A stretch of 64,000 nt of DNA from Ylistrum balloti (taxonomy: Eukaryota), in NCBI RefSeq assembly GCF_031769215.1, contig NW_026782237.1:310001-374000 (forward strand), read 5' to 3'. The translations under genes and the position numbers were made by a program. Below are positions 7,003 to 32,950 of this stretch, one piece after another. Numbering within the stretch: the stretch's first letter is position 1; each line of letters starts with the position of its first letter. Under the pieces are notes generated by a model. It saw nothing but the letters and a program-made list of their open reading frames with translations, ran no database searches and was not told the DNA's origin.

Positions 7003-7065
7003 TCAAGAAGTCCATGCACACTCTTTGTTTTCCTTCCAGGCTGAGCTTTCATCACCATATATCTC
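7003..7065 (-). CDS. MOCS2: MOCS2B last coding exon
   Basis: Acceptor ttattttgcag|. Encodes EIYGDESSAWKENKECAWTS*, matching the MOCS2B C-terminus WKGNKEC. The joined ORF is 144 aa. Confidence 0.92.
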   Translation of the reverse strand, partial: EIYGDESSAWKENKECAWTS

Positions 7066-7434: not shown

Positions 7435-7558
7435 CTTTTTCCATATAGGTACCACTGCTTTGACTGTATCAATAGCAAAGCTGACTGCTTCTAGACTTTC
7501 TTTCCTGTGTGGTGATGACACAGCTATTATAATGCTAGCCTCTTCCACTGGTACAACA
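7435..7558 (-). CDS. MOCS2: MOCS2B exon
   Basis: Acceptor ctattgcag| and donor |gtagtg. Encodes [41 protein letters not shown], containing the MoaE motifs SSxHR and PIWKKE. Confidence 0.95.
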
Positions 7559-14740: not shown

Positions 14741-15045
14741 TAATCAACATTTTAGTAAATACACCTACTAGATTAACCACAAGTAGAAGGTGGTAACTTA
14801 CTTTAATCTTTGACTAACAACAGCCAACCATAACCCATCTAAATTTAAAACGAATCTTCTAAAACATTATCACATCAGCTTCATCAGTTAGTACATGTAG
14901 TAGATGTTTTGTAACCTTCCATCAGCAAAGAAGGTAGAAGATATGGATAATATAATACTTCATAATTATAAACTGATTGATCACTTCTATAATGAATAAC
15001 AAATATTTTGTCAGTAGTCTACAGGTATAACACACTGATCCTTAC

Positions 15046-15196
15046 CCAATACGGTGTACCATTGCTATTTTGTGTATGTCCCACTTATCACGTATCTGAT
15101 GACAAATTTCCATCATCTTTTTCTTGGCCATTGGAATATAGGCCTCATACTCCAAACGTAAGACTTTCTTCCCGCCAAAGTTATCTCTTGTCGTAC
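15046..15196 (-). CDS. MOCS2: MOCS2B exon
   Basis: Acceptor ttttttacag| and donor |gtaagg. Encodes (G)[49 protein letters not shown](G), containing the MoaE motifs GTTR and LEYEAY. Confidence 0.95.
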
Positions 15197-15264
15197 CTGT
15201 AAAAAAAGATTCAATAGCCTTAATAAGTCTTAATATCAACTGGTTAGTAATAATAAACTTCACA

Positions 15265-16336
15265 TTAACCTGATGTTAACTTTCACCTTTTCAATTGACC
15301 TGATGATAACTTTCAAGTTTCTACTAACCTGATGATAACCTTCAACTTTTCTACAAACCTGATTATAACCTACATCTTTCTACTAACCTGATGATAACCT
15401 CAATATTTTCTATTAACCTGATGATAACCTACATCTTTCTACCAACCTGATGATAACCTACATCTTTCTACTAACTTGATGATAACCTACATCTTTCTAC
15501 TAACCTGATGATAACCTACACCTTTCTACTAACCTGATGATAACCTACATCTTTCTTCTAACCTGATGATAACCTACATCTTTCTATTAACCTGATGATA
15601 ACCTACATCTTTCTACTAACCTGATGATAACCTACATCTTTCTACTAACCTGATGATAACCTACATCTTTCTACTAACCTGATGATAACCTACATCTTTC
15701 TACTAACCTGATGATAACCTACATCTTTCTACTAACCTGATGATAACCTACATCTTTCTACTAACCTGATGATAACCTACATCTTTCTACTAACCTGATG
15801 ATAACCTACGTCTTTCTAACCTGATGATAACCTACACCTTTCTACTAACCTGATGATAACCTACATCTTTCTACTAACCTGATGATAACCTACGTCTTTC
15901 TACTAACCTGATGATAACCTACGTCTTTCTACTAACCTGATGATAACCTACATCTTTCTACTAACCTGATGATAACCTACATCTTTCTACTAACCTGATG
16001 ATAACCTACATCTTTCTACTAACCTGATGATAACCTACATCTTTCTACTAACCTGATGATAACCTACATCTTTCTACTAACCTGATGATAACCTACATCT
16101 TTCTACTAACCTGATGATAACCTACATCTTTCTACTAACCTGATGATAACCTACATCTTTCTACTAACCTGATGATAACCTACATCTTTCTGCTAACCTG
16201 ATGATAACCTACATCTTTCAACTAACCTGATGATAACCTACATCTTTCTACTAACCTGATGATAACCTACATCTTCCTACTAACCTGATGATAACCTACA
16301 TCTTTCTACTAACCTGATGATAACCTACATCTTTCT
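15265..16336 (+). repeat. 29-bp minisatellite (about 37 units) in a MOCS2B intron
   Basis: Unit is ctaacctgatgataacctacatctttcta. The array is homogeneous and degrades towards the exon at 15196. Confidence 0.97.
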
Positions 16337-17196
16337 GCTAACCTGATGATAACCTTTACCTTATTAATTACTCCAGAAAGGCCTTTATTTTCATTCTCAG
16401 TGATAGTCTATCATTTTTCTGCTGGCTTTAAGAAATTTTCCAGGACCTTGTAGTACTTTTCCACAACAAACAAACATCTATACAGTAAATTCCAGATAGG
16501 ATTTACATTGTTAATGACAGTTATGATTACACTATAGTAATGTCTGCCTTTGGAAACACAACAATACACAATTATGTCAAGTTCATACACTCAATAAAAG
16601 GTTTTTGTCTGTCTGAAGTAACTTTTTCCTGGAGAATTTTTAAATTATGCATAAGAACTACAAAGAACTCAACTTACACATAATCAGCATCAGAAAAAAG
16701 AAAAACCACATACAATCTATTTTATTATTGGCAATGAAATGTGAATTTTTACTGATGTAATTTGAAATTAATTTTTCTCTTTGATCAAAGTGAAGTTCCT
16801 TCAAGTTAATCCACAGTAAGTTTTTCTCGAGTGTGATGGAGAGATTATACCTATACTATATATAACCATGACTTATCTGTGGGCTATCTACAAGAGATCT
16901 GAGAGCAGTGGGAAAACAATAGGAATTCTACAGTCATACAACATTAAACCCCTACATATTTGGTTCAGGATGAAGTTGACTGGGTTTGATGATTGGTCAT
17001 TGATTTGATATCAAAGTGAAATCTTCCCTGAGATTTTAATGATTTTTTTTTTAGTACCAAATAATACATACTTGTCTTAAAACCTACATTGTATTGTAGT
17101 GAAACTCTGTTTAATGAAGGAAGGAAAGTAACATGATGCACAGGCTATATATATATAGGAAATGGCATGATTGAATGATAACAGGGAACATATACA

Positions 17197-17431
17197 ATAA
17201 CAGCATATGTTTATGATAACAGGGTATGTTTATGATAACAATGTATGTTTATGATAACAGTGTATGTTAATGATAACAGCATATGTTTATGATAACAGGG
17301 TATGTTTATGATAACAGCATATGTTTATGATAACAGCATATGTTTATGATAACAGGGTATGTTTATGATAACAGCGTATGTTTATGATAACAGTGTATGT
17401 TTATGATAACAACATATGTTTATGATAACAG
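17197..17431 (+). repeat. 19-bp minisatellite (about 12 units)
   Basis: Unit is tatgtttatgataacag(c/g/t)(a/g). Confidence 0.93.
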
Positions 17432-17566
17432 AGTACCATTACATACACCATCAGAGTATGTATTAAAAGTACATATAGATGATAGGGCTTTTATCACTCA
17501 CCTTAATCTTTAACCCAGCAGTGTTATTTCCAAATTAAAGCTCAGTTATTTAACCTCTTTGAAGCC

Positions 17567-18485
17567 ACAAGACCAACGGGTAAAATTCCTATATCATTAC
17601 TGTCTTTCTCTCTTGATTCTCATTAAGAGTTTATATGGTATATGGGTTGGTATCTCAACTATATAAAAAAACATGCCATACCCAAGGGTCATTTCTTGAA
17701 TAACAAATATGTTAATCTCTTGTTGCCAAACAATTCTATAAATCAAGGGCCAGTTCTTACATTGTGAATGTTTTTATCTCTTGATGCCCATTGCTATGTA
17801 AGATTTAGGGTTCGGGATCTCAACTGTTTCAAAGATATTAATTACCATGAAACTGAGTCCCTAGGAATGGGATCAGACCCCAAGGCCAATTCCTACATCA
17901 CGAGTGTGCCCAGGAATTTCAAGAATTTGCCCTATTTCTTCCCCCTCCCAAGGTGCTGAGATCCACCTTTTATAGAAAATTGATTTCCCTTTGCCCAAAG
18001 TTGCTTCTGACCAAATTCCTCTATTACCCATATTTGACCATGCCCTTTCCCCCTCAGGGGGGCAAGATCTACTGTTAATATACAAAATTGATTACCCTTC
18101 TTCCAAAGATCCTTCAAACAAAATTTGTGCCAAGTACAATCATTCTTACAGGAGGAGTAGGATTTTTAAAAATGTTTGTTCTATTACCCCTATTTGGCCC
18201 CATCCTCCTGCCCCAGAGGGTCGTGAGATCAACCATTTTTCTGACCAAAAATAGGCAAAATTTACAAATCATACAAAAATGTTCCCTTTCCTGTAAGGAT
18301 GCTTTTGGTTAAATATGGTCAAAATCCCCTCAGTCGTTCATGATTATGTAGAAAAGTTAACAGACACTACATGATGGATGGACAACTGATGATGGATGCC
18401 GCAATGTCTGAAGACAGATGCCAGAAAAGAGATGCCGCAGTATCCCTACAGTTCACTCGACCCTTTGAGTCTGGCAGACTAAAAA
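17567..18485 (+). mobile_element. Old degenerate Helentron-associated element
   Basis: Has decayed internal C-rich repeats (ccccaagg, cccctcagggg, gccccagaggg), a gatgga-type microsatellite remnant, and a 3' end agttcactcgaccctttgagtctggcagactaaaaa resembling the hairpin-plus-A-run end of this class. Confidence 0.45.
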
Positions 18486-18949
18486 TAAGACCACCTCCCC
18501 ATCCCATCTTACACCAACAAATATCATTTCATTACTTTTTTATTAACCCATTCTAAACATCAAGTCATCTTTTTAACATTTTGAAGAATCAATCTACGTT
18601 CAATGAAAACAGGTTATAAGAAAAATCCATTGAAAGGATGATGTTAGTATGAAATAATCATACACTGCTTCCTGGTATTATATTTAGATGGCAAACCTCC
18701 TGTCAGTTTGGTTAGATGGGTAGTTCACTGATACACAAGCAGAATTGTGCTTTTTACAGCCTGGTTTATTCATCACAGTATCCAAAGTTATGAAGATCAA
18801 AATGAAACCTGTGATTTCTTAACAGTCGACTTACAGGTATTGGAGACATCTATATCCCAGAAAAAGAACTTACATCACAAGTAACTACAATCATATAATA
18901 TCTCAATCTGATACAAGTGGGCCACACTTTCTAAGGTCTATATACATAC

Positions 18950-19046
18950 CTATGAAGACAGATATGGCTCCACATGCTGGAGAAGATACAAGTTTAGAAG
19001 TAACGTCTGCATTGATCCTGTCTTCAGTTATGTCCACATGGTCCAT
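18950..19046 (-). CDS. MOCS2: MOCS2B (molybdopterin synthase catalytic subunit) first coding exon
   Basis: Acceptor ttatattcag|G-ATG and donor |gtatgt. Encodes MDHVDITEDRINADVTSKLVSSPACGAISVFI(G), matching MoaE/MOCS2B SPLCGAISLFVG. Confidence 0.9.
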
Positions 19047-19104
19047 CCTGAATATAACACATAAAACATCAATAAAAGCATCAAAGTCAACATCACAACC
19101 TGTA

Positions 19105-19800
19105 CTATAGTATTACCCTGTTAATATCATGTTCATCAACATCATTCCCGTTCTATAGTATACTATCACCCTGTTAATATCATGTTCATCAACATCATTC
19201 CCGTTCTATAGTATACTATCACCCTGTTAATATCATGTTCATCAACATCATACTCATGATGTATATCACCCTGTTAATATCATGCTCATCAACACCATAC
19301 CTATGATGTAGTATCACCCTGTTAATATCATACTCATCAACATCATAGCACATTCTATAGTATTACCCTATTAATGTCATGCTCATCAACATCATACCCA
19401 TTCTGTAGTATCACCCTATTAATATCACACTCACCAACTTTATAACCCATTCTGTAGTATTGCCCTGTTAACAACCAACTAACCAACATCCTAATCTGTG
19501 TTGTAGTATCCGATGTTAATATAATACTAACCAATATCATATCCTGTGAAGTAGCATCACCCATCTAACTTACCAACATTATACCCCATGATGAAGTATC
19601 ACTCTGTTAATATTACACTAACCAATATCATTACTGGTGTTGTAATATCATCATTATAACATCATGCTCAGCAATATCATAGCCCTTGTTGTAGGATTAT
19701 TGTTAATAACCTGCTGACTAACAATTATAATCTGTGATGTAATATCTCCCTGTTAATATCCTGCTGTTTATATCTCATTAACCAACATCATAAACTATGT
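19105..19800 (+). repeat. 47-53-bp minisatellite decaying away from MOCS2B exon 1
   Basis: accctgttaatatcat occurs at 19115, 19168, 19221, 19268 and 19316, then progressively diverges. Confidence 0.88.
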
Positions 19801-20407
19801 TGACTGTATGATATCATGCTGTCTTTATCTTGTTAACTAATATTGTAAACTATGTTGACTATAAAATATCACCATCATTAGTCAAGCTGACTCTCTCCAC
19901 TCGCAATAAGAATGGAATATAAGAATCATTGAGGGAAGTAAGCCCTAATTCTGATTTCATTCTGTAAACTTTTAAGAATTTTGATGAATGATTTTCATCA
20001 AGAAAATGTTAAAAAAAAAAAAAATGCAAAGGAAACGAAATTGACAGTTGAATATTGCAAAGTGTGGATTTAAAATTCCACTGGAAATTGAATATCCGTA
20101 ATTTTCATTTGAATTTTTAATTACTACCACCCTATACTATACCCTGGTGTTTCCTATGTCTTGAGCAATTTTTTTTTACTTTCACCAAAGCACATTGCAT
20201 ATTTACTTTCTTCCAAGTACAACCTGTAAATTTGTTTGTGAATATACTTGTACATGTGTCGCTTTGTGTATCTAATTTTTTGTGAGTTTTACCTATACAT
20301 TTGGTGCTGGTGTATCAATTTGGTACACCTGTTTATCCAACTCTATATTAAGTGCCTGTTTATTTACTTTTTTACCTGTGTATGTGGTACTTTTACAACA
20401 CACCTGT

Positions 20408-20531
20408 CTATCCTCCACTGATCGGTGGGATCACAGCTACCTCATCACCCGGATTCAGGTGTACTTCTTGTCCTGCCTCTAGATAGTCCTCGTTAACAGA
20501 CACCACTAAATTATCAGCTAACACCTGTAAA
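20408..20531 (-). CDS. MOCS2: MOCS2A exon 3 with C-terminal Gly-Gly and stop
   Basis: Acceptor gttgtgtag|. Encodes (S)LQVLADNLVVSVNEDYLEAGQEVHLNPGDEVAVIPPISGG*, ending in the diagnostic MoaD/MOCS2A PPISGG terminus. The joined ORF is 86 aa. Confidence 0.95.
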
Positions 20532-20652
20532 CTACACAACAGGAATAACAATGTTAAATATAGAGAAGAAAAATGCTATTACACCAAACAATTACATAAA
20601 TATTGTTATTAACAATTAGAAAGTGTGCCCAAAAATGTCATGGTAAATATAG

Positions 20653-21476
20653 ACAAGAGATCCCAGAGGGATCTTGGCGCCCACCATTTGAGGATCTGTT
20701 TTCAGTTCTTGAAGATTTGTTTATTTTTTTTTTTGTTTGTGACAGGTGTTGTAAATGTTCATGAACTGGTCTTCATTGAATGTACTCAATGATGGCACAA
20801 GATATTTTTCTTAAGCACCTATTAGCAAATATCATTTGAAAAAGATCCCAAAGTATTATTAGTTAGCAGTCAGTTAAAGGTGGATAATGGACAATATGCT
20901 TGTGCTGTATTACTGTCGACATCCAAGATGGCTGCCTGTGGGCCACCTTGATTTCAAATCAGTCCAAAAAAGGTACAATGCATAACTAGGGACCAAGGGA
21001 AACCCAATATCTATGAAATATCAGAAGGCTCCATCCAGTACTTCCTCAGATATAGCAGTAACAAACTTTTACATCCAAAATCCAAGATGGCCACCTGTCG
21101 GCCATCTTGAATTCGAATCAGTCCAAAAAAGGTACAATGCACAACTAGGGACTAAGGGGAAACTGCATATGAAATTTGAGAAAGATCCATCCCGTACTTT
21201 CCAAGAAATAGAAGTAACAAACTTTTACTTCCAAAATCCAAGATGGCCTCCTGTCGGCCATCTTGAATTCGAATCAGTCCAAAAAAGATACAATGCACAA
21301 CTAGGGACCAAGGGGAAACTGCATATGAAATTTGAGAAAGATCCATCCAGTACTTTTCCAGAAATAGCGGTAACAAGAATTGTTTACGGACGGACGGACC
21401 ACGGACCACGGACAACGGACCACGGACGCAGGGCGATTTGAATAACCCACCATCTATTAGATGGTGGGCTAAAAAA
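20653..21476 (+). mobile_element. Helentron-associated (HINE/pearl/DINE-1-type) non-autonomous element, near intact
   Basis: 5' end acaagagatcccagagggatcttggcgcccacca; about three internal 156-159-bp repeats (tccaagatgg at 20922, 21081, 21237); (ggac/acgg)n microsatellite; 3' hairpin cccaccatcta-t-tagatggtggg whose arm matches the 5' cccacca; ends in an A-run. Confidence 0.8.
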
Positions 21477-22266
21477 CCAAATCTTATTACACTGTACCTT
21501 TACGTGTATTTAATTATTAACCATTTAACAGTGCATCAAAACTGGTCATCTGTGATGTATCATTCTTATGCTCTACTCTATCTAATTCTAAATTGTTTTA
21601 AAAGGTGCAATTAACTTGTCTTTTGTACAAGCAAGGGCCATAACTCTAGAAATAAGAAACCAATCCAGTGAATTACAGTCAAATACCAAATGTTGAATGA
21701 TATGCCAAGAATAAAGTGATGATGAGTTGATGCAGGAACTAATTCTAGACACTGAATGATTGAGAGATCCACTTTGATCAATAAGGATTGTAAATGAATC
21801 TGCTGGATGTATACCGGTAAGTTGTGCCATTTTGCTATCAAATTTCATCTGGTGACACCATGTATTATATATATTGTTACTTTACAATTGCATTTAATTG
21901 TATTTGGTGGTTTCAGTGTGAATGAATGAATTCAAATCACTAATTTCATAAAGCACTATCTGAAGTCCCAAACAAATAGTGGTATCACCAACAATGTATT
22001 CTAGGAAGGTATGGCACTAATTTAAATTGATGGCATCGGCCATATCTAATTCAGGTCAAAAGTACAAACACTGCCTCACCTTGGTCAACCCATGATCTTA
22101 GTATTAAGTTCCAGTGATTGGTAGAGTTGGAAAGAGAGCCCAAACAACCTTTTTCTTTGTAGATCAATGGTCAAAATGTAGATCAAACTGAACTTCTAGT
22201 ACATAACACACCATTTCACTCAGGTGATCTCCATGCCAAAAGTATGTTCAAGTGAAAGTAGTGAAG

Positions 22267-26703: not shown

Positions 26704-27572
26704 ACAAGAGATGCCAGATGCTCTTTGAAAGTTCGATCTTTTCCCTTCTTTTCTCTTCTCTTCCCTGTTTTTGCTCTTAATGATAATAAATTTGAACATT
26801 CCTTTGCAGAAATAGTGTTGATAAGGTATATACCTGTCACATCCAAGATGGTCACCTGGAAGTCATTTTATATTTTAATCAAGTCTCAAAATCAAATGGG
26901 CACAATGGAACATACGTATGAAATTTAAGAGAGATCCATTCAGGGCTTCTTAAGAATTAGGTATGATAATCTTTACAAGGTGAAATCCAAGATGGCTTCC
27001 TATCGGCCATTTTCTTTTTCTGATCAGTCCTAAACTCAAACAGACACAACTAGGAGCAAAAAGACCTATACCTGGATTCTGATAAATATCTGCAATATTG
27101 CTCAAGAAATTGCAATAACAAACTTTCAAAATCAAAATCCAAGATGGCCTTCTGTTGCCCATTTTCATTTCCTGACACAGTACAAAAATCAACAGGCTCA
27201 ACAAGGGATACACAAAATTAGAGAAAAATCTAACCTGTAGTCGTCAAGAAATAGTGATAATAAACTTTCTAAGACAAAATCCATGATGGCTGCCTGTTGG
27301 CCATTAAGTTTTTCTGATCAGACCCAAAATCAAACAAGAGCAACCACAGACCAAGGGGCCCCTACACTTGAAATTTGAGAAAAGATCAACACATTAATTC
27401 TCTAGAAATAGTGATGACAAACTTTCAAAGTGAAAATCCTGTCCTGTCAGGAAACCTATAAATGAAATTAGAGAGTTCCGTACAGGACTTCTTTAGAAAA
27501 AGGGATAACAAACATTACTAGGTGTAATCCAAGATGGCTGCTTGTCTGCCATCCAATGACGGTGGGCTAAAA
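26704..27572 (+). mobile_element. Older copy of the 20653-21476 element family
   Basis: Starts acaagag, contains several diverged tccaagatggc repeats, and ends ccatccaatgacggtgggctaaaa. Confidence 0.7.
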
Positions 27573-30621: not shown

Positions 30622-30743
30622 CTGGGAAATTGGCTCACAATATTGTTGATCAGTTGTTGAAGATTGGTTGGATTTTCTACCTTGATTCTGGTGGTTTTCA
30701 GACCAGACAACTCACGGCTTTTAGCAAAGAACAGTACTTCCAC
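30622..30743 (-). CDS. MOCS2: MOCS2A (molybdopterin synthase sulfur carrier subunit) exon 2
   Basis: Acceptor tattcacag| and donor |gtaaag. Encodes VEVLFFAKSRELSGLKTTRIKVENPTNLQQLINNIVSQFP, matching the MOCS2A/MoaD N-terminus VEVLYFAKS. Confidence 0.92.
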
Positions 30744-32635
30744 CTGTGAATACAAACAAATGTTGATGCTAGAGACAAAAATTGTTATCTTAGGATGACC
30801 TCATCTTATCAATGCTTGTATACATTTCAACTGGCTTTGTCTTTTGGTACATTTTGAAAATTTAAATAGTGAAAATATCCTGCCCCTACATTGGGGCTTG
30901 AATTAAGAAATTCAAATCTCTGACAAGGCCATCAGATGCTCCTGTTATTGAAAATGTTCTGACAATATAAAACTATAAATATGTATGTAGTTTTTTGATG
31001 CACATTTACTCTCCACCTCAGACTAGTCACTCTCCTTCACAAAGTCCTTGTCCCACAACCTATGTTAAATCTTCAGCTCTAATGAAGCTTCCTGATCTTC
31101 TATACACTACATACAAATGTATTGTGATCAGTGCATCAACTCTGTAATTGGGAAGATTAATGAAGAATGAAAAATATGTTACTCCCACTGGAGTTCAAAC
31201 TCACTAGGAAGATGCCTTACACAAGACAAAGATTACACAAGCTATTTTACCTAAACTAAGTTGCATTATTGCCTTAATTCATTTGAGAACAGGACAGGAT
31301 CATCAGTAAATAAATGAATGAAGACTTTTAAAATTATACTGTCAGCATCAAAATATCTTTCAATTTAGCAAAATTGGTAGAAATACCACCTGCCAATATA
31401 AAAATAAAATCTGACTGTCTAAATATAGTACATTGGAGAATCTGGAACTCTAGTCATTAATTGGAGAAAAAATTTCAAGCAAAGTATTGGTTATAAATTG
31501 AGGTTCATATATTTTTGTTACTTTTACTAAATAACTTCTGCTGGGATTGGAATTCTGTTCCTTTATATGGCTTATTTCTTGTTGATTTTCAAATATACAC
31601 CAATATTTCATATGGTTTATCTGATAAAAAACAAAAGTTTGTGGCTCAATCATGATTGAGCTATGTTTATAAATCAATCTAGCTAAAACTTTATAGTTTC
31701 CACAAATTAAATATTATTTGTCTCTACAATTGTTTGGTGAATTGAGGTATACATTTTCCATTAAAAATACAAGTAGGCCAGGCCCTTTTGTGAATTTTTT
31801 TACAAAAAGAATTATTTGAAATCCTCACTTGGGCTAAATATCCCTTCAAGTGGAAAATATCCTTTACTACACATATATGTGTGTGTGCATGTGAAAGACA
31901 AGCTATAACATATCAACTTTATAATCTTGATCAGTGTAATGCCCCATATTTATATATCACTGTACCTTTCATATGCATAGCTACCTTTACACCGATGTAG
32001 ATTTATTTCCTCCCAGCTTTTGGGGGCTTTGAATCTCAAATCCCCTACCTGGGAGGGCTTCACACCTGGACCCTTAGCAAGAGTGACTCCCTGCACCCAA
32101 ATTCATTTCCGTATACACATCAAAATTGTTTGGCTATTCATCTGCCTTTAAACCCAGATAATCAGTTTAATGTTACAAAAGTATACGGTGATTTTCTGTT
32201 GGTCACTTCTGAATACCAAATTGACATGCATGTCTTCCCAAATCCATTTCATCTTCAATATCAAAGATACAAGAACCTTTATTTTACGTAGTGTTTTAAA
32301 ACAATTTAACTTTAGCTCTGTAAAGCTATTCTTACGACAAAAAGAAAAAAATATAAACACGGACGAAAGTGCGCTAAAATGTTCTCGATACCACTTGGAT
32401 CTAAATTATCTAAATTTTTCAACGACTCAAACAGAAAGTGATATCTACATGTACATGAACGAATGTCAACCTAGCCGAAGCGAGTTTTCATTATTTGAAA
32501 CAAAGATTGACGTTACTTGTTGTAACCTCATCTGCATTAGTAAATTATTATGTTTGTTAGATCGCAGGTGTGCCCTGACAATTATTTTTAATAGCAATAT
32601 ATCCATCATTTCTATCCTGGCGGTTCATATCTCAC

Positions 32636-32650
32636 CTCTACACCAGCCAT
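32636..32650 (-). CDS. MOCS2: MOCS2A first coding exon (MAGVE)
   Basis: ATGGCTGGTGTAGAG|gtgaga has a strong phase-0 donor that joins VEVLFFAK. It lies in a CpG-containing promoter-like region. The exon is short, and an alternative (MQMRLQQ near 32530) cannot be fully excluded. Confidence 0.65.
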
Positions 32651-32950
32651 ATGTACGAATCAGTGTAGATGGACGCTTAGTGTACATCCGCCTTCCCTAC
32701 TGCCCCTTTCAAACATTCCAACGACTCCAAGTTCGTTTTTACTGCGCATGTATGGGATAAAGAAAGCAGTCGACATTTCGAAATAGCAGAAGAAAACACA
32801 GCTACAAGCTCAGAAAATGTTAAGAAGAGTTTGGAAGAACTTGAAAGTGTCAGTATGTTTGGGTAAATTGGTCTATCAATTTTATAATATTCAACAACAA
32901 GCAATCCCAATCGGTGGATTGTTGAGAACTGACACATGGCGGGAAATTCA
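32651..32950. promoter_or_regulatory. Putative MOCS2 promoter, possibly bidirectional
   Basis: Local CpG enrichment just upstream of the MOCS2A ATG. Motifs seen: NRF1-like TGCGCATG (32743-32750), CCAAT (32907-32911) and overlapping YY1/E2F-like ATGGCGGGAAA (32936-32946). These are motif matches only. Confidence 0.5.

What the first reader, a model, noticed from the sequence alone, without database searches (positions are those of the whole stretch)
18950..20531. Bicistronic MOCS2 with non-overlapping ORFs joined by a 5-nt spacer assembled by splicing
Seen: the MOCS2A stop is followed by ACAG|gt, and the next exon begins G-ATG, so the predicted mRNA reads GGA GGA TAG ACAG|G ATG GAC. Established: human MOCS2 encodes both molybdopterin synthase subunits from one locus in overlapping frames, and human MOCS2B has an N-terminal extension of about 40 aa. 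Inference: here MOCS2B lacks the extension, the frames do not overlap, and the strong Kozak context (A at -3, G at +4) is created only by the splice. This is an operon-like arrangement suited to termination-reinitiation or leaky scanning. The MOCS2A stop lies upstream of four introns, so the mRNA must escape NMD.
Basis: partly seen in the sequence, partly recalled or inferred. Interest (0 to 1): 0.72.

Follow-up and report, generated by a model that had tools for sequence, protein, structure and literature searches.

The report
Scallop MOCS2 two-protein gene locus
This is the scallop copy of MOCS2, a gene already known in humans and flies to encode both subunits of molybdopterin synthase; here the two reading frames do not overlap and an intron sits in the short gap between them, which other invertebrates show is an ordinary variant.

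Summary
The sequence observation is correct. On the minus strand a MoaD/ThiS-type ORF (MOCS2A, 86 aa, ending IPPISGG) stops at TAG 20410-20408. It is followed by ACAG and a GT donor (20403-20402). The next exon (acceptor AG 19049-19048) starts G-ATG and opens a 144-aa MoaE-type ORF (MOCS2B) in four exons, ending at 7003. The predicted spacer is 5 nt.

No RNA data could be obtained, so the junction is predicted, not seen. Comparison supports it. The closest relative found has TAA, 17 nt, then ATG|gt: its MOCS2B start codon is the last three bases of the MOCS2A exon. Two other invertebrate-like contigs have spacers of 7 and 23 nt. Published work already treats Drosophila MOCS2A as an upstream ORF of a MOCS2B that starts MDHV..., without an N-terminal extension.

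The Kozak context is not made only by the splice, because the unspliced acceptor also gives A at -3. The NMD puzzle is the same in human MOCS2.

The mechanism is untested. Leaky scanning is most likely (about 0.45). Termination-reinitiation and separate isoforms remain open.

Verdict: a new member of a known kind, of modest interest.

The parts
32201..32800 (.). Only CpG-undepleted patch inside the MOCS2 transcription unit; candidate promoter/TSS region lying over exon 1
   Evidence: CpG o/e is 1.06-1.17 here against 0.1-0.4 in the rest of 1-39600. CCAAT/ATTGG motifs lie further upstream, outside this patch, at 33000-32996, 32911-32907 and 32871-32867. The promoter role is inferred.
32636..32650 (-). 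MOCS2A exon 1, coding part: ATG GCT GGT GTA GAG (MAGVE), then donor gtgaga. The AUG context cat ATG G has C at -3, which is weak.
   Evidence: Assigned because exon 2 has no in-frame ATG. Only 5 aa, so homology cannot confirm it: inferred.
30622..30743 (-). MOCS2A exon 2 (VEVLFFAKSRELSG...SQFP), ends in phase 2
   Evidence: Pfam ThiS profile 1-35, E 0.003, below Pfam's gathering score on this exon alone.
20404..20531 (-). Shared exon 3: C-terminal half of MOCS2A (...PGDEVAVIPPISGG), stop TAG 20410-20408, then ACAG before the donor
   Evidence: Pfam ThiS profile 41-76, E 1.8e-8. Human MOCS2A 5mpo_A, E 8e-7.
20437..20445 (-). The only ATG between the two start codons: out-of-frame mini-ORF ATG AGG TAG inside the GDEVA codons
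   Evidence: Equivalent ATG-N3-TAG mini-ORFs are in L001 and L002.
19048..20403 (-). Intron 3, which splits the intercistronic spacer. It carries AATAAA at 20364-20359 and a 53/97-nt minisatellite at 19105-19541.
   Evidence: CpG o/e 0.11-0.34. There are 14 ATGs in its last 200 nt.
18950..19047 (-). Exon 4: G, then the MOCS2B start ATG 19046-19044 (context ACAGG ATG G), MDHVDITEDRINADVTSKLVSSPACGAISVFI
   Evidence: Pfam MoaE profile 1-27. Human MOCS2B 4ap8_A residues 8-38. N-terminal alignment A2.
15046..15196 (-). MOCS2B exon 5 ([19 protein letters not shown]...HRI)
   Evidence: Pfam MoaE E 3.3e-15. 5mpo_C E 1.1e-14.
7435..7558 (-). MOCS2B exon 6 ([20 protein letters not shown]...PIWKK)
   Evidence: Pfam MoaE E 2.3e-9.
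7003..7065 (-). MOCS2B last coding exon (EIYGDESSAWKENKECAWTS, stop TGA 7005-7003). A possible poly(A) signal ATTAAA lies at 6921-6916.

Best explanation
This is the scallop orthologue of the metazoan MOCS2 locus. It looks like one transcription unit of seven exons on the minus strand, about 25.7 kb from 32650 to 7003. Exons 1-3 encode the small sulfur-carrier subunit MOCS2A and exons 4-7 the catalytic subunit MOCS2B of molybdopterin synthase. An old intron sits directly after the MOCS2A stop. After splicing, the stop and the MOCS2B AUG lie 5 nt apart without overlap. What is shown is the gene structure and its conservation. What is inferred is that both proteins come from one spliced mRNA made from a single promoter at exon 1. 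I also infer that MOCS2B is reached mainly by leaky scanning, as reported for human MOCS2. On this view some 40S subunits pass the weak MOCS2A AUG (C at -3), cross a 263-nt stretch that holds only one other AUG (a 2-codon mini-ORF), and start at the strong MOCS2B AUG (A at -3, G at +4). Ribosomes translating MOCS2B would then clear the downstream exon junctions. The 0.5 confidence combines two parts: about 0.85 for the gene structure and about 0.45 for leaky scanning.
For: Structure:
- ThiS and MoaE domains are collinear on canonical GT-AG exons.
- The in-script model gives 86 aa, a 5-nt spacer and 144 aa.

Use of the exon 3 to exon 4 splice:
- In the closest relative (L002-L009, 78% identical in exon 5) the MOCS2A exon ends TAA + 17 nt + ATG|gt.
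- The next exon there (also in its congener L012) has no in-frame ATG, so its MOCS2B start codon lies in the MOCS2A exon.

Conserved start:
- The N-termini of seven sequences from six taxa align at the same Met.
- Drosophila MOCS2B starts MDHVKL.

Single promoter:
- The only CpG-normal patch in the unit is at 32201-32800, over exon 1. Intron 3 is as CpG-depleted as the rest of the gene body.
- The last 200 nt of intron 3 hold 14 ATGs, and four of them open ORFs that run across the MOCS2B AUG.

Leaky scanning:
- The pair shows a weak AUG followed by a strong AUG.
- There is 1 ATG in 263 nt where 5.2 are expected from base composition (P 0.02). L011 shows 2 against 6.2 and L001 shows 1 against 4.5.
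- No relative has an internal Met in MOCS2A.
- Leaky scanning is the published mechanism for human MOCS2 (PMC9607355, PMC3923131).
Against: - There is no RNA evidence at all.
- The shortage of ATGs disappears when the protein sequence is held fixed and only synonymous codons are resampled (expected 1.1-1.3, P 0.6-0.7). It reflects amino-acid content, not codon choice.
- The closest relative has four out-of-frame ATGs in exon 3 alone, with no depletion.
- L011's MOCS2A AUG has a purine at -3.
- Short spacers in all four taxa (5, 7, 17, 23 nt) are what reinitiation would favour.
- An AATAAA 44 nt after the stop could make a MOCS2A-only mRNA.
- Exon 1 and the TSS are inferred. If transcription starts upstream of 32776, a 38-codon uORF precedes MOCS2A.
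Confidence: 0.5

Rival explanations
1. Termination-reinitiation: ribosomes translate MOCS2A, terminate at UAG, and a fraction of 40S subunits stay on the mRNA and restart at the AUG 5 nt downstream.
For: The stop-to-start distance is short in every non-overlapping relative found: 5, 7, 17 and 23 nt. Out-of-frame AUGs inside ORF1, as in L002, do not matter for this route. It would give coupled, roughly fixed subunit ratios.
Against: ORF1 is 86 codons, and by general knowledge reinitiation after long ORFs is inefficient without a special element. No UGGGA (TURBS motif 1) occurs in the last 120 nt of ORF1 in any of the four taxa. In human MOCS2 the MOCS2B AUG lies 77 nt upstream of the MOCS2A stop and leaky scanning is reported. 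A shared mechanism would therefore not be reinitiation.
Confidence: 0.2
2. Separate mRNA isoforms: MOCS2A comes from transcripts that keep exon 1 (or end at the intronic AATAAA). MOCS2B comes from transcripts with an alternative first exon or start site lacking the MOCS2A AUG. Each mRNA would then be functionally monocistronic.
For: FlyBase curators note that dicistronic loci often also make monocistronic isoforms through alternative promoters, poly(A) sites or splices (PMC4528330). AATAAA lies 44 nt after the MOCS2A stop. The CpG-normal patch runs about 430 nt past the exon 1 donor, which leaves room for a second first exon. From my own memory, unverified here, RefSeq describes human MOCS2 this way.
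Against: There is no promoter-like CpG patch in intron 3. That intron is full of ATGs just before exon 4. In the closest relative the MOCS2B start codon sits in the MOCS2A exon, so exon 3 must be part of the MOCS2B mRNA. Even such isoforms must scan through exons 2-3.
Confidence: 0.25
3. Independent MOCS2B promoter in intron 3 (19050-20400).
For: In the scallop the ATG lies inside exon 4. An intron-initiated transcript would still find 19046 as its first in-frame ATG.
Against: CpG o/e there is 0.11-0.34, like the gene body. The intron is mostly minisatellite. ATGs at 19093, 19081, 19069 and 19062 open ORFs that overlap the MOCS2B start. The relative's start codon lies in exon 3.
Confidence: 0.05

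Closest known systems
Human MOCS2 (bicistronic, overlapping frames; Stallmeyer et al. 1999 as cited in PMC9607355 and PMC3923131)
   Same: It has the same two proteins in the same order. MOCS2A is in exons 1-3 and MOCS2B in the later exons of a 7-exon gene. The MOCS2A stop is at the end of exon 3, upstream of four introns. The C-terminus ...AVIPPISGG is identical.
   Different: In human the last 77 bp of exon 3 code in both frames, and MOCS2B has an N-terminal extension. In the scallop there is no overlap, the spacer is 5 nt, the MOCS2B AUG is at bases 2-4 of exon 4, and the protein is 144 aa with no extension.
Drosophila Mocs2 / CG42503 dicistronic locus and arthropod ESTs (Hayden and Bosco 2008, PMC2276209; Crosby et al. 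2015, PMC4528330)
   Same: MOCS2A is an upstream ORF on the MOCS2B transcript. MOCS2B starts MDHVKL..., homologous to scallop MDHVDI..., without an extension. The authors describe the arrangement as highly conserved.
   Different: Drosophila MOCS2B carries a C-terminal MBIP domain (PMC9228816), which the scallop protein lacks. The parts of those papers I read did not say whether an intron splits the fly spacer.
Bacterial moaD-moaE operons
   Same: The gene order is the same, with close spacing or overlap. In 56 of 80 metagenome loci fetched with the MoaD C-terminus, MoaE follows directly.
   Different: Those are prokaryotic coupled translation units without introns. Here there are eukaryotic exons, a cap-dependent mRNA and an intron inside the spacer.
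Calicivirus/influenza B type termination-reinitiation (TURBS)
   Same: The stop and restart codons lie within a few nucleotides.
   Different: No UGGGA motif precedes the stop. This is a cellular gene, and the mechanism is not shown.
MOCS1 (bicistronic; MOCS1B made by splice-mediated fusion; PMC9607355, bioRxiv 10.1101/429183)
   Same: It belongs to the same pathway and has a two-ORF locus in which splicing decides what is made.
   Different: In MOCS1 the second ORF is expressed as a fusion. Here, skipping exon 3 would by arithmetic fuse MOCS2A residues 1-45 in frame to MOCS2B (exon 3 is 128 nt; plus my own arithmetic). This does not hold in L002, where exon 3 is 144 nt, so I do not propose it.

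Membership tests
Metazoan bicistronic MOCS2 locus | Upstream ORF is a MoaD/ThiS-fold sulfur carrier ending in Gly-Gly | tested here: met
   Pfam ThiS on exons 2 and 3. The ORF ends IPPISGG and matches human MOCS2A 5mpo_A at E 8e-7.
Metazoan bicistronic MOCS2 locus | Downstream ORF is a MoaE catalytic subunit | tested here: met
   Pfam MoaE is collinear over exons 4-6. Human MOCS2B 5mpo_C matches at E 1.1e-14.
Metazoan bicistronic MOCS2 locus | Both ORFs lie on one mature mRNA | not testable with these tools
   No RNA run was found and read laying laid nothing. Indirect support: the relative's MOCS2B ATG lies in the MOCS2A exon, and there is a single CpG-normal patch.
Human-type overlapping MOCS2 | MOCS2B start lies inside the MOCS2A coding sequence (77-nt overlap, N-terminal extension) | tested here: not met
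   The spacer is 5 nt. An in-frame TGA lies 42 nt upstream of the MOCS2B ATG, with no in-frame ATG between them.
Leaky-scanning bicistronic mRNA | Weak context at the first AUG and strong context at the second | tested here: met
   The contexts are cgtacat ATG G (C at -3) and agacagg ATG G (A at -3, G at +4).
Leaky-scanning bicistronic mRNA | No AUG between the two starts | tested here: inconclusive
   There is one AUG, a 2-codon mini-ORF. It is depleted against composition (P 0.02) but not against synonymous resampling (P 0.6). L002 has four.
Termination-reinitiation (TURBS type) | Stop and restart codons overlap or lie within a few nt | tested here: met
   The distance is 5 nt, and 7, 17 and 23 nt in relatives.
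Termination-reinitiation (TURBS type) | UGGGA motif complementary to 18S rRNA within about 100 nt upstream of the stop | tested here: not met
   No TGGGA occurs in the last 120 nt of ORF1 plus spacer in the window, L001, L002 or L011.

The most novel reading that the evidence does not exclude
In bivalves the MOCS2B start codon is held within 1-3 nt of the exon 3/exon 4 junction (ATG|gt in one lineage, ag|G ATG in the scallop). MOCS2B translation would then depend strictly on that splice. The exon-junction complex, deposited over the MOCS2A stop region, might promote ribosome retention and restart. That would be a splice-coupled form of termination-reinitiation not described for cellular genes.
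Probability: 0.1. Interest if true: 0.6.

Novelty: new member of a known kind. Interest (0 to 1): 0.3.

Why it matters
MOCS2 is one of the few deeply conserved two-protein genes of animals. The scallop copy and its relatives show the likely older layout: two frames that do not overlap, a short spacer, and an intron right after the MOCS2A stop. The human overlap can be derived from this layout by moving the MOCS2B start upstream into exon 3. This gives a simple comparative series for testing how the second ORF is reached: start codon in exon 4, at the last three bases of exon 3, or 77 nt inside exon 3. It does not reveal a new kind of system.

Tried and rejected
**RNA evidence**
- The look-up of sequencing runs on 14900-20600 returned only one DNA-like holder, X1, and no RNA run. 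The long stretch may have hidden exon-only holders.

**Protein and locus searches**
- A word search with the MOCS2A exon-3 ORF found nothing.
- P0002, P0004, P0012 and P0013 came back without DNA.
- The metagenome scan with the MoaD C-terminus returned mostly bacterial operons.

**Tests that gave nothing**
- Codon-level ATG avoidance: synonymous resampling shows none.
- TURBS motif: absent.
- I asked whether the minisatellite before exon 4 is a copy of the acceptor region, following earlier notes on POLR3C. The alignment score of 18 lies within the shuffles (14 +/- 2.4, max 26), so this is rejected.
- An in-frame MOCS2A-MOCS2B fusion by exon-3 skipping works arithmetically in the scallop but not in L002, so I rejected it as chance.

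- Stallmeyer 1999 (PMC1377786) is not held.
- Joining was done only inside scripts.
- I did not use the big representative search: the proteins' identity was not open.

Full report
**What is there**

The gene lies on the minus strand. Reading with a stop-to-stop ORF list gives seven exons with canonical GT-AG borders.

| Exon | Window coordinates | Content |
|---|---|---|
| 1 | ATG 32650-32648, ends 32636 | MAGVE, then donor gtgaga |
| 2 | 30743-30622 | MOCS2A |
| 3 | 20531-20404 | MOCS2A C-terminus, stop, ACAG |
| 4 | 19047-18950 | G, then the MOCS2B start |
| 5 | 15196-15046 | MOCS2B |
| 6 | 7558-7435 | MOCS2B |
| 7 | 7065-7003 | MOCS2B, stop TGA |

- Pfam scans of the single exons, by reference, put ThiS on exons 2 and 3. 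They put MoaE on exons 4, 5 and 6 in profile order 1-27, 29-78 and 81-113.
- The exons match the human MOCS2A and MOCS2B chains of PDB 5MPO and 4AP8.
- Joined inside a script only, the model gives an 86-aa MOCS2A ending IPPISGG and a stop TAG at 20410-20408. The spacer is ACAG|G, 5 nt, and MOCS2B is 144 aa.
- The acceptor at 20531 is the only one that keeps the MOCS2A frame. Using cag|G at 20524 would run into TAG.
- A second donor, cacag|gtaaaa with exon end at 20376, cannot be excluded. It would give a 33-nt spacer, still without an ATG or an overlap.

**No RNA evidence**

- Use of the 20404|19047 junction is therefore a prediction.

**Comparative evidence**

A word search with the exon-5 ORF gave 14 MoaE fragments. 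Their contigs were fetched and mapped with the scallop exon peptides.

- The closest relative is L002-L009, 78% identical in exon 5. It has the same exon layout.
  - Its MOCS2A exon ends GGA GGA TAA + 17 nt + ATG|gtaatt.
  - Its next exon begins acag|ACT GAT ATA CAT GTG and has no in-frame ATG.
  - A congener, L012, has the same exon 4.
  - In that lineage the MOCS2B start codon is the last three bases of the MOCS2A exon. The exon 3 to exon 4 splice must therefore be used to make MOCS2B.
- L011 is a compact genomic contig with TAA + AATTAAT + ATG, a 7-nt spacer and no intron.
- L001 has TAA + 23 nt + ATG.
- L017 shows TAG AACTG|gtacta, but the MOCS2B exon is not on the contig.
- L010 has ATG 10 nt into exon 4. 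No MOCS2A C-terminal motif (PP-x-S-G-G-stop) is seen within 7.2 kb upstream of exon 4.
- L015 has no MOCS2A within 10 kb.
- The MOCS2B N-termini align at the same Met.
- The crystal constructs of the human protein begin at about the same point. The absent extension therefore removes nothing from the fold.

**What is already published**

- Human MOCS2 has exons 1-3 for MOCS2A and exons 3-7 for MOCS2B. The last 77 bp of exon 3 are dual-coding, and leaky scanning is reported (PMC9607355, PMC3923131).
- Hayden and Bosco (PMC2276209) list Drosophila CG10238 as a bicistronic transcript. It has a 90-aa MOCS2A uORF and a MOCS2B that starts MDHVKLVND. They align ESTs of crab, butterfly, mosquitoes and a finch.
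- FlyBase curators call the pair a highly conserved dicistronic example (PMC4528330).
- The scallop locus is thus a new member of a known kind. Its one particular trait is that the intron falls inside the spacer.

- The A at -3 is not made only by the splice. The unspliced acceptor ttcag|GATGG gives the same -3 A and -2 G.
- A MOCS2A stop upstream of four introns is also the human condition. By general knowledge, NMD in flies and worms does not depend on exon junctions, and for molluscs this is unknown.

**Mechanism**

For leaky scanning:
- The first AUG has C at -3 and the second has A at -3 and G at +4.
- Between them is one ATG (20445-20443, ATG AGG TAG), where base composition predicts 5.2 (P 0.02).
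- L011 (2 against 6.2) and L001 (1 against 4.5) are similar.
- None of the MOCS2A sequences has an internal Met.

Against leaky scanning:
- With the protein held fixed, synonymous resampling predicts 1.1-1.3 ATGs. There is therefore no codon-level avoidance.
- L002 has four out-of-frame ATGs in exon 3.

For reinitiation:
- All four spacers are short.

Against reinitiation:
- ORF1 has 86 codons.
- No UGGGA motif is present.
- The human layout excludes it.

Against a separate promoter in intron 3:
- CpG o/e is 0.11-0.34 there, like the gene body. The only CpG-normal patch of the unit is 32201-32800, over exon 1.
- The last 200 nt of the intron hold 14 ATGs, and four of them open ORFs that run over the MOCS2B AUG.

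Alternative first exons within the CpG patch cannot be excluded. Nor can a MOCS2A-only mRNA ending after the AATAAA at 20364-20359.

My odds are leaky scanning 0.45, separate isoforms 0.25, reinitiation 0.2 and other 0.1.

**Verdict**

- This is an ordinary invertebrate form of a known bicistronic gene, with a neat series of start-codon positions around one old intron.
- An earlier follow-up note says the assembly is a scallop's.

Noticed in passing
L010:7263-8191: In another relative, MOCS2B exon 4 together with its gtaagg donor is tandemly repeated nine times with a period of 104 nt. Only the first copy keeps the ATG. This is a run of decoy exons inside the intron.
   Followed up: partly
window 15266-16355: A 29-nt unit repeated 37.6 times (94% matches) ends about 70 nt upstream of the exon 5 acceptor. 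On the gene strand each unit carries CAGGTTA, which resembles a donor, and an ATG.
   Followed up: no
window 19105-19541: A 53/97-nt minisatellite lies 58 nt upstream of exon 4. It has seven ATTAAYAG|GGT acceptor-like motifs with poor pyrimidine tracts. It is not significantly similar to the real acceptor region (score 18 against shuffles of 14 +/- 2.4).
   Followed up: yes
window 1-64000: The CpG landscape changes sharply. Positions 1-39600 are CpG-depleted (o/e mostly 0.1-0.4), apart from patches at 32201-32800 and, marginally, 21201-21600. From 39600 to the end there is almost no depletion. This suggests methylated gene bodies next to an unmethylated region.
   Followed up: partly
window 32663-32776: An ATG at 32776 opens a 38-codon ORF in the MOCS2A frame. 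It stops at TGA 32665-32663, 12 nt before the MOCS2A ATG. It would be a uORF if transcription starts upstream of it.
   Followed up: no
window 20359-20364: AATAAA lies 44 nt after the MOCS2A stop, inside intron 3. It could be a poly(A) signal for a MOCS2A-only transcript. Chance expectation is about one per 850 nt.
   Followed up: no
window 20900-21500 and 26950-27320: Repeated ORF-like peptides (motifs such as GRQ.AILDFG and RRPSWIL) recur in introns 2. They probably belong to an interspersed or tandem repeat family, and one copy coincides with the marginal CpG patch at 21201-21600.
   Followed up: no
L015:1-10400: A relative with small introns has MOCS2B but no GG-ending ThiS-like ORF within 10 kb upstream. 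A reverse-transcriptase ORF lies nearby. The adjacent arrangement is therefore not universal.
   Followed up: partly
L016, L018, L039, L060: GC-rich eukaryote-like metagenome contigs carry MOCS2A-like exons ending PPISGG or PPLSGG with no MoaE nearby. These look like stand-alone small-subunit genes.
   Followed up: no
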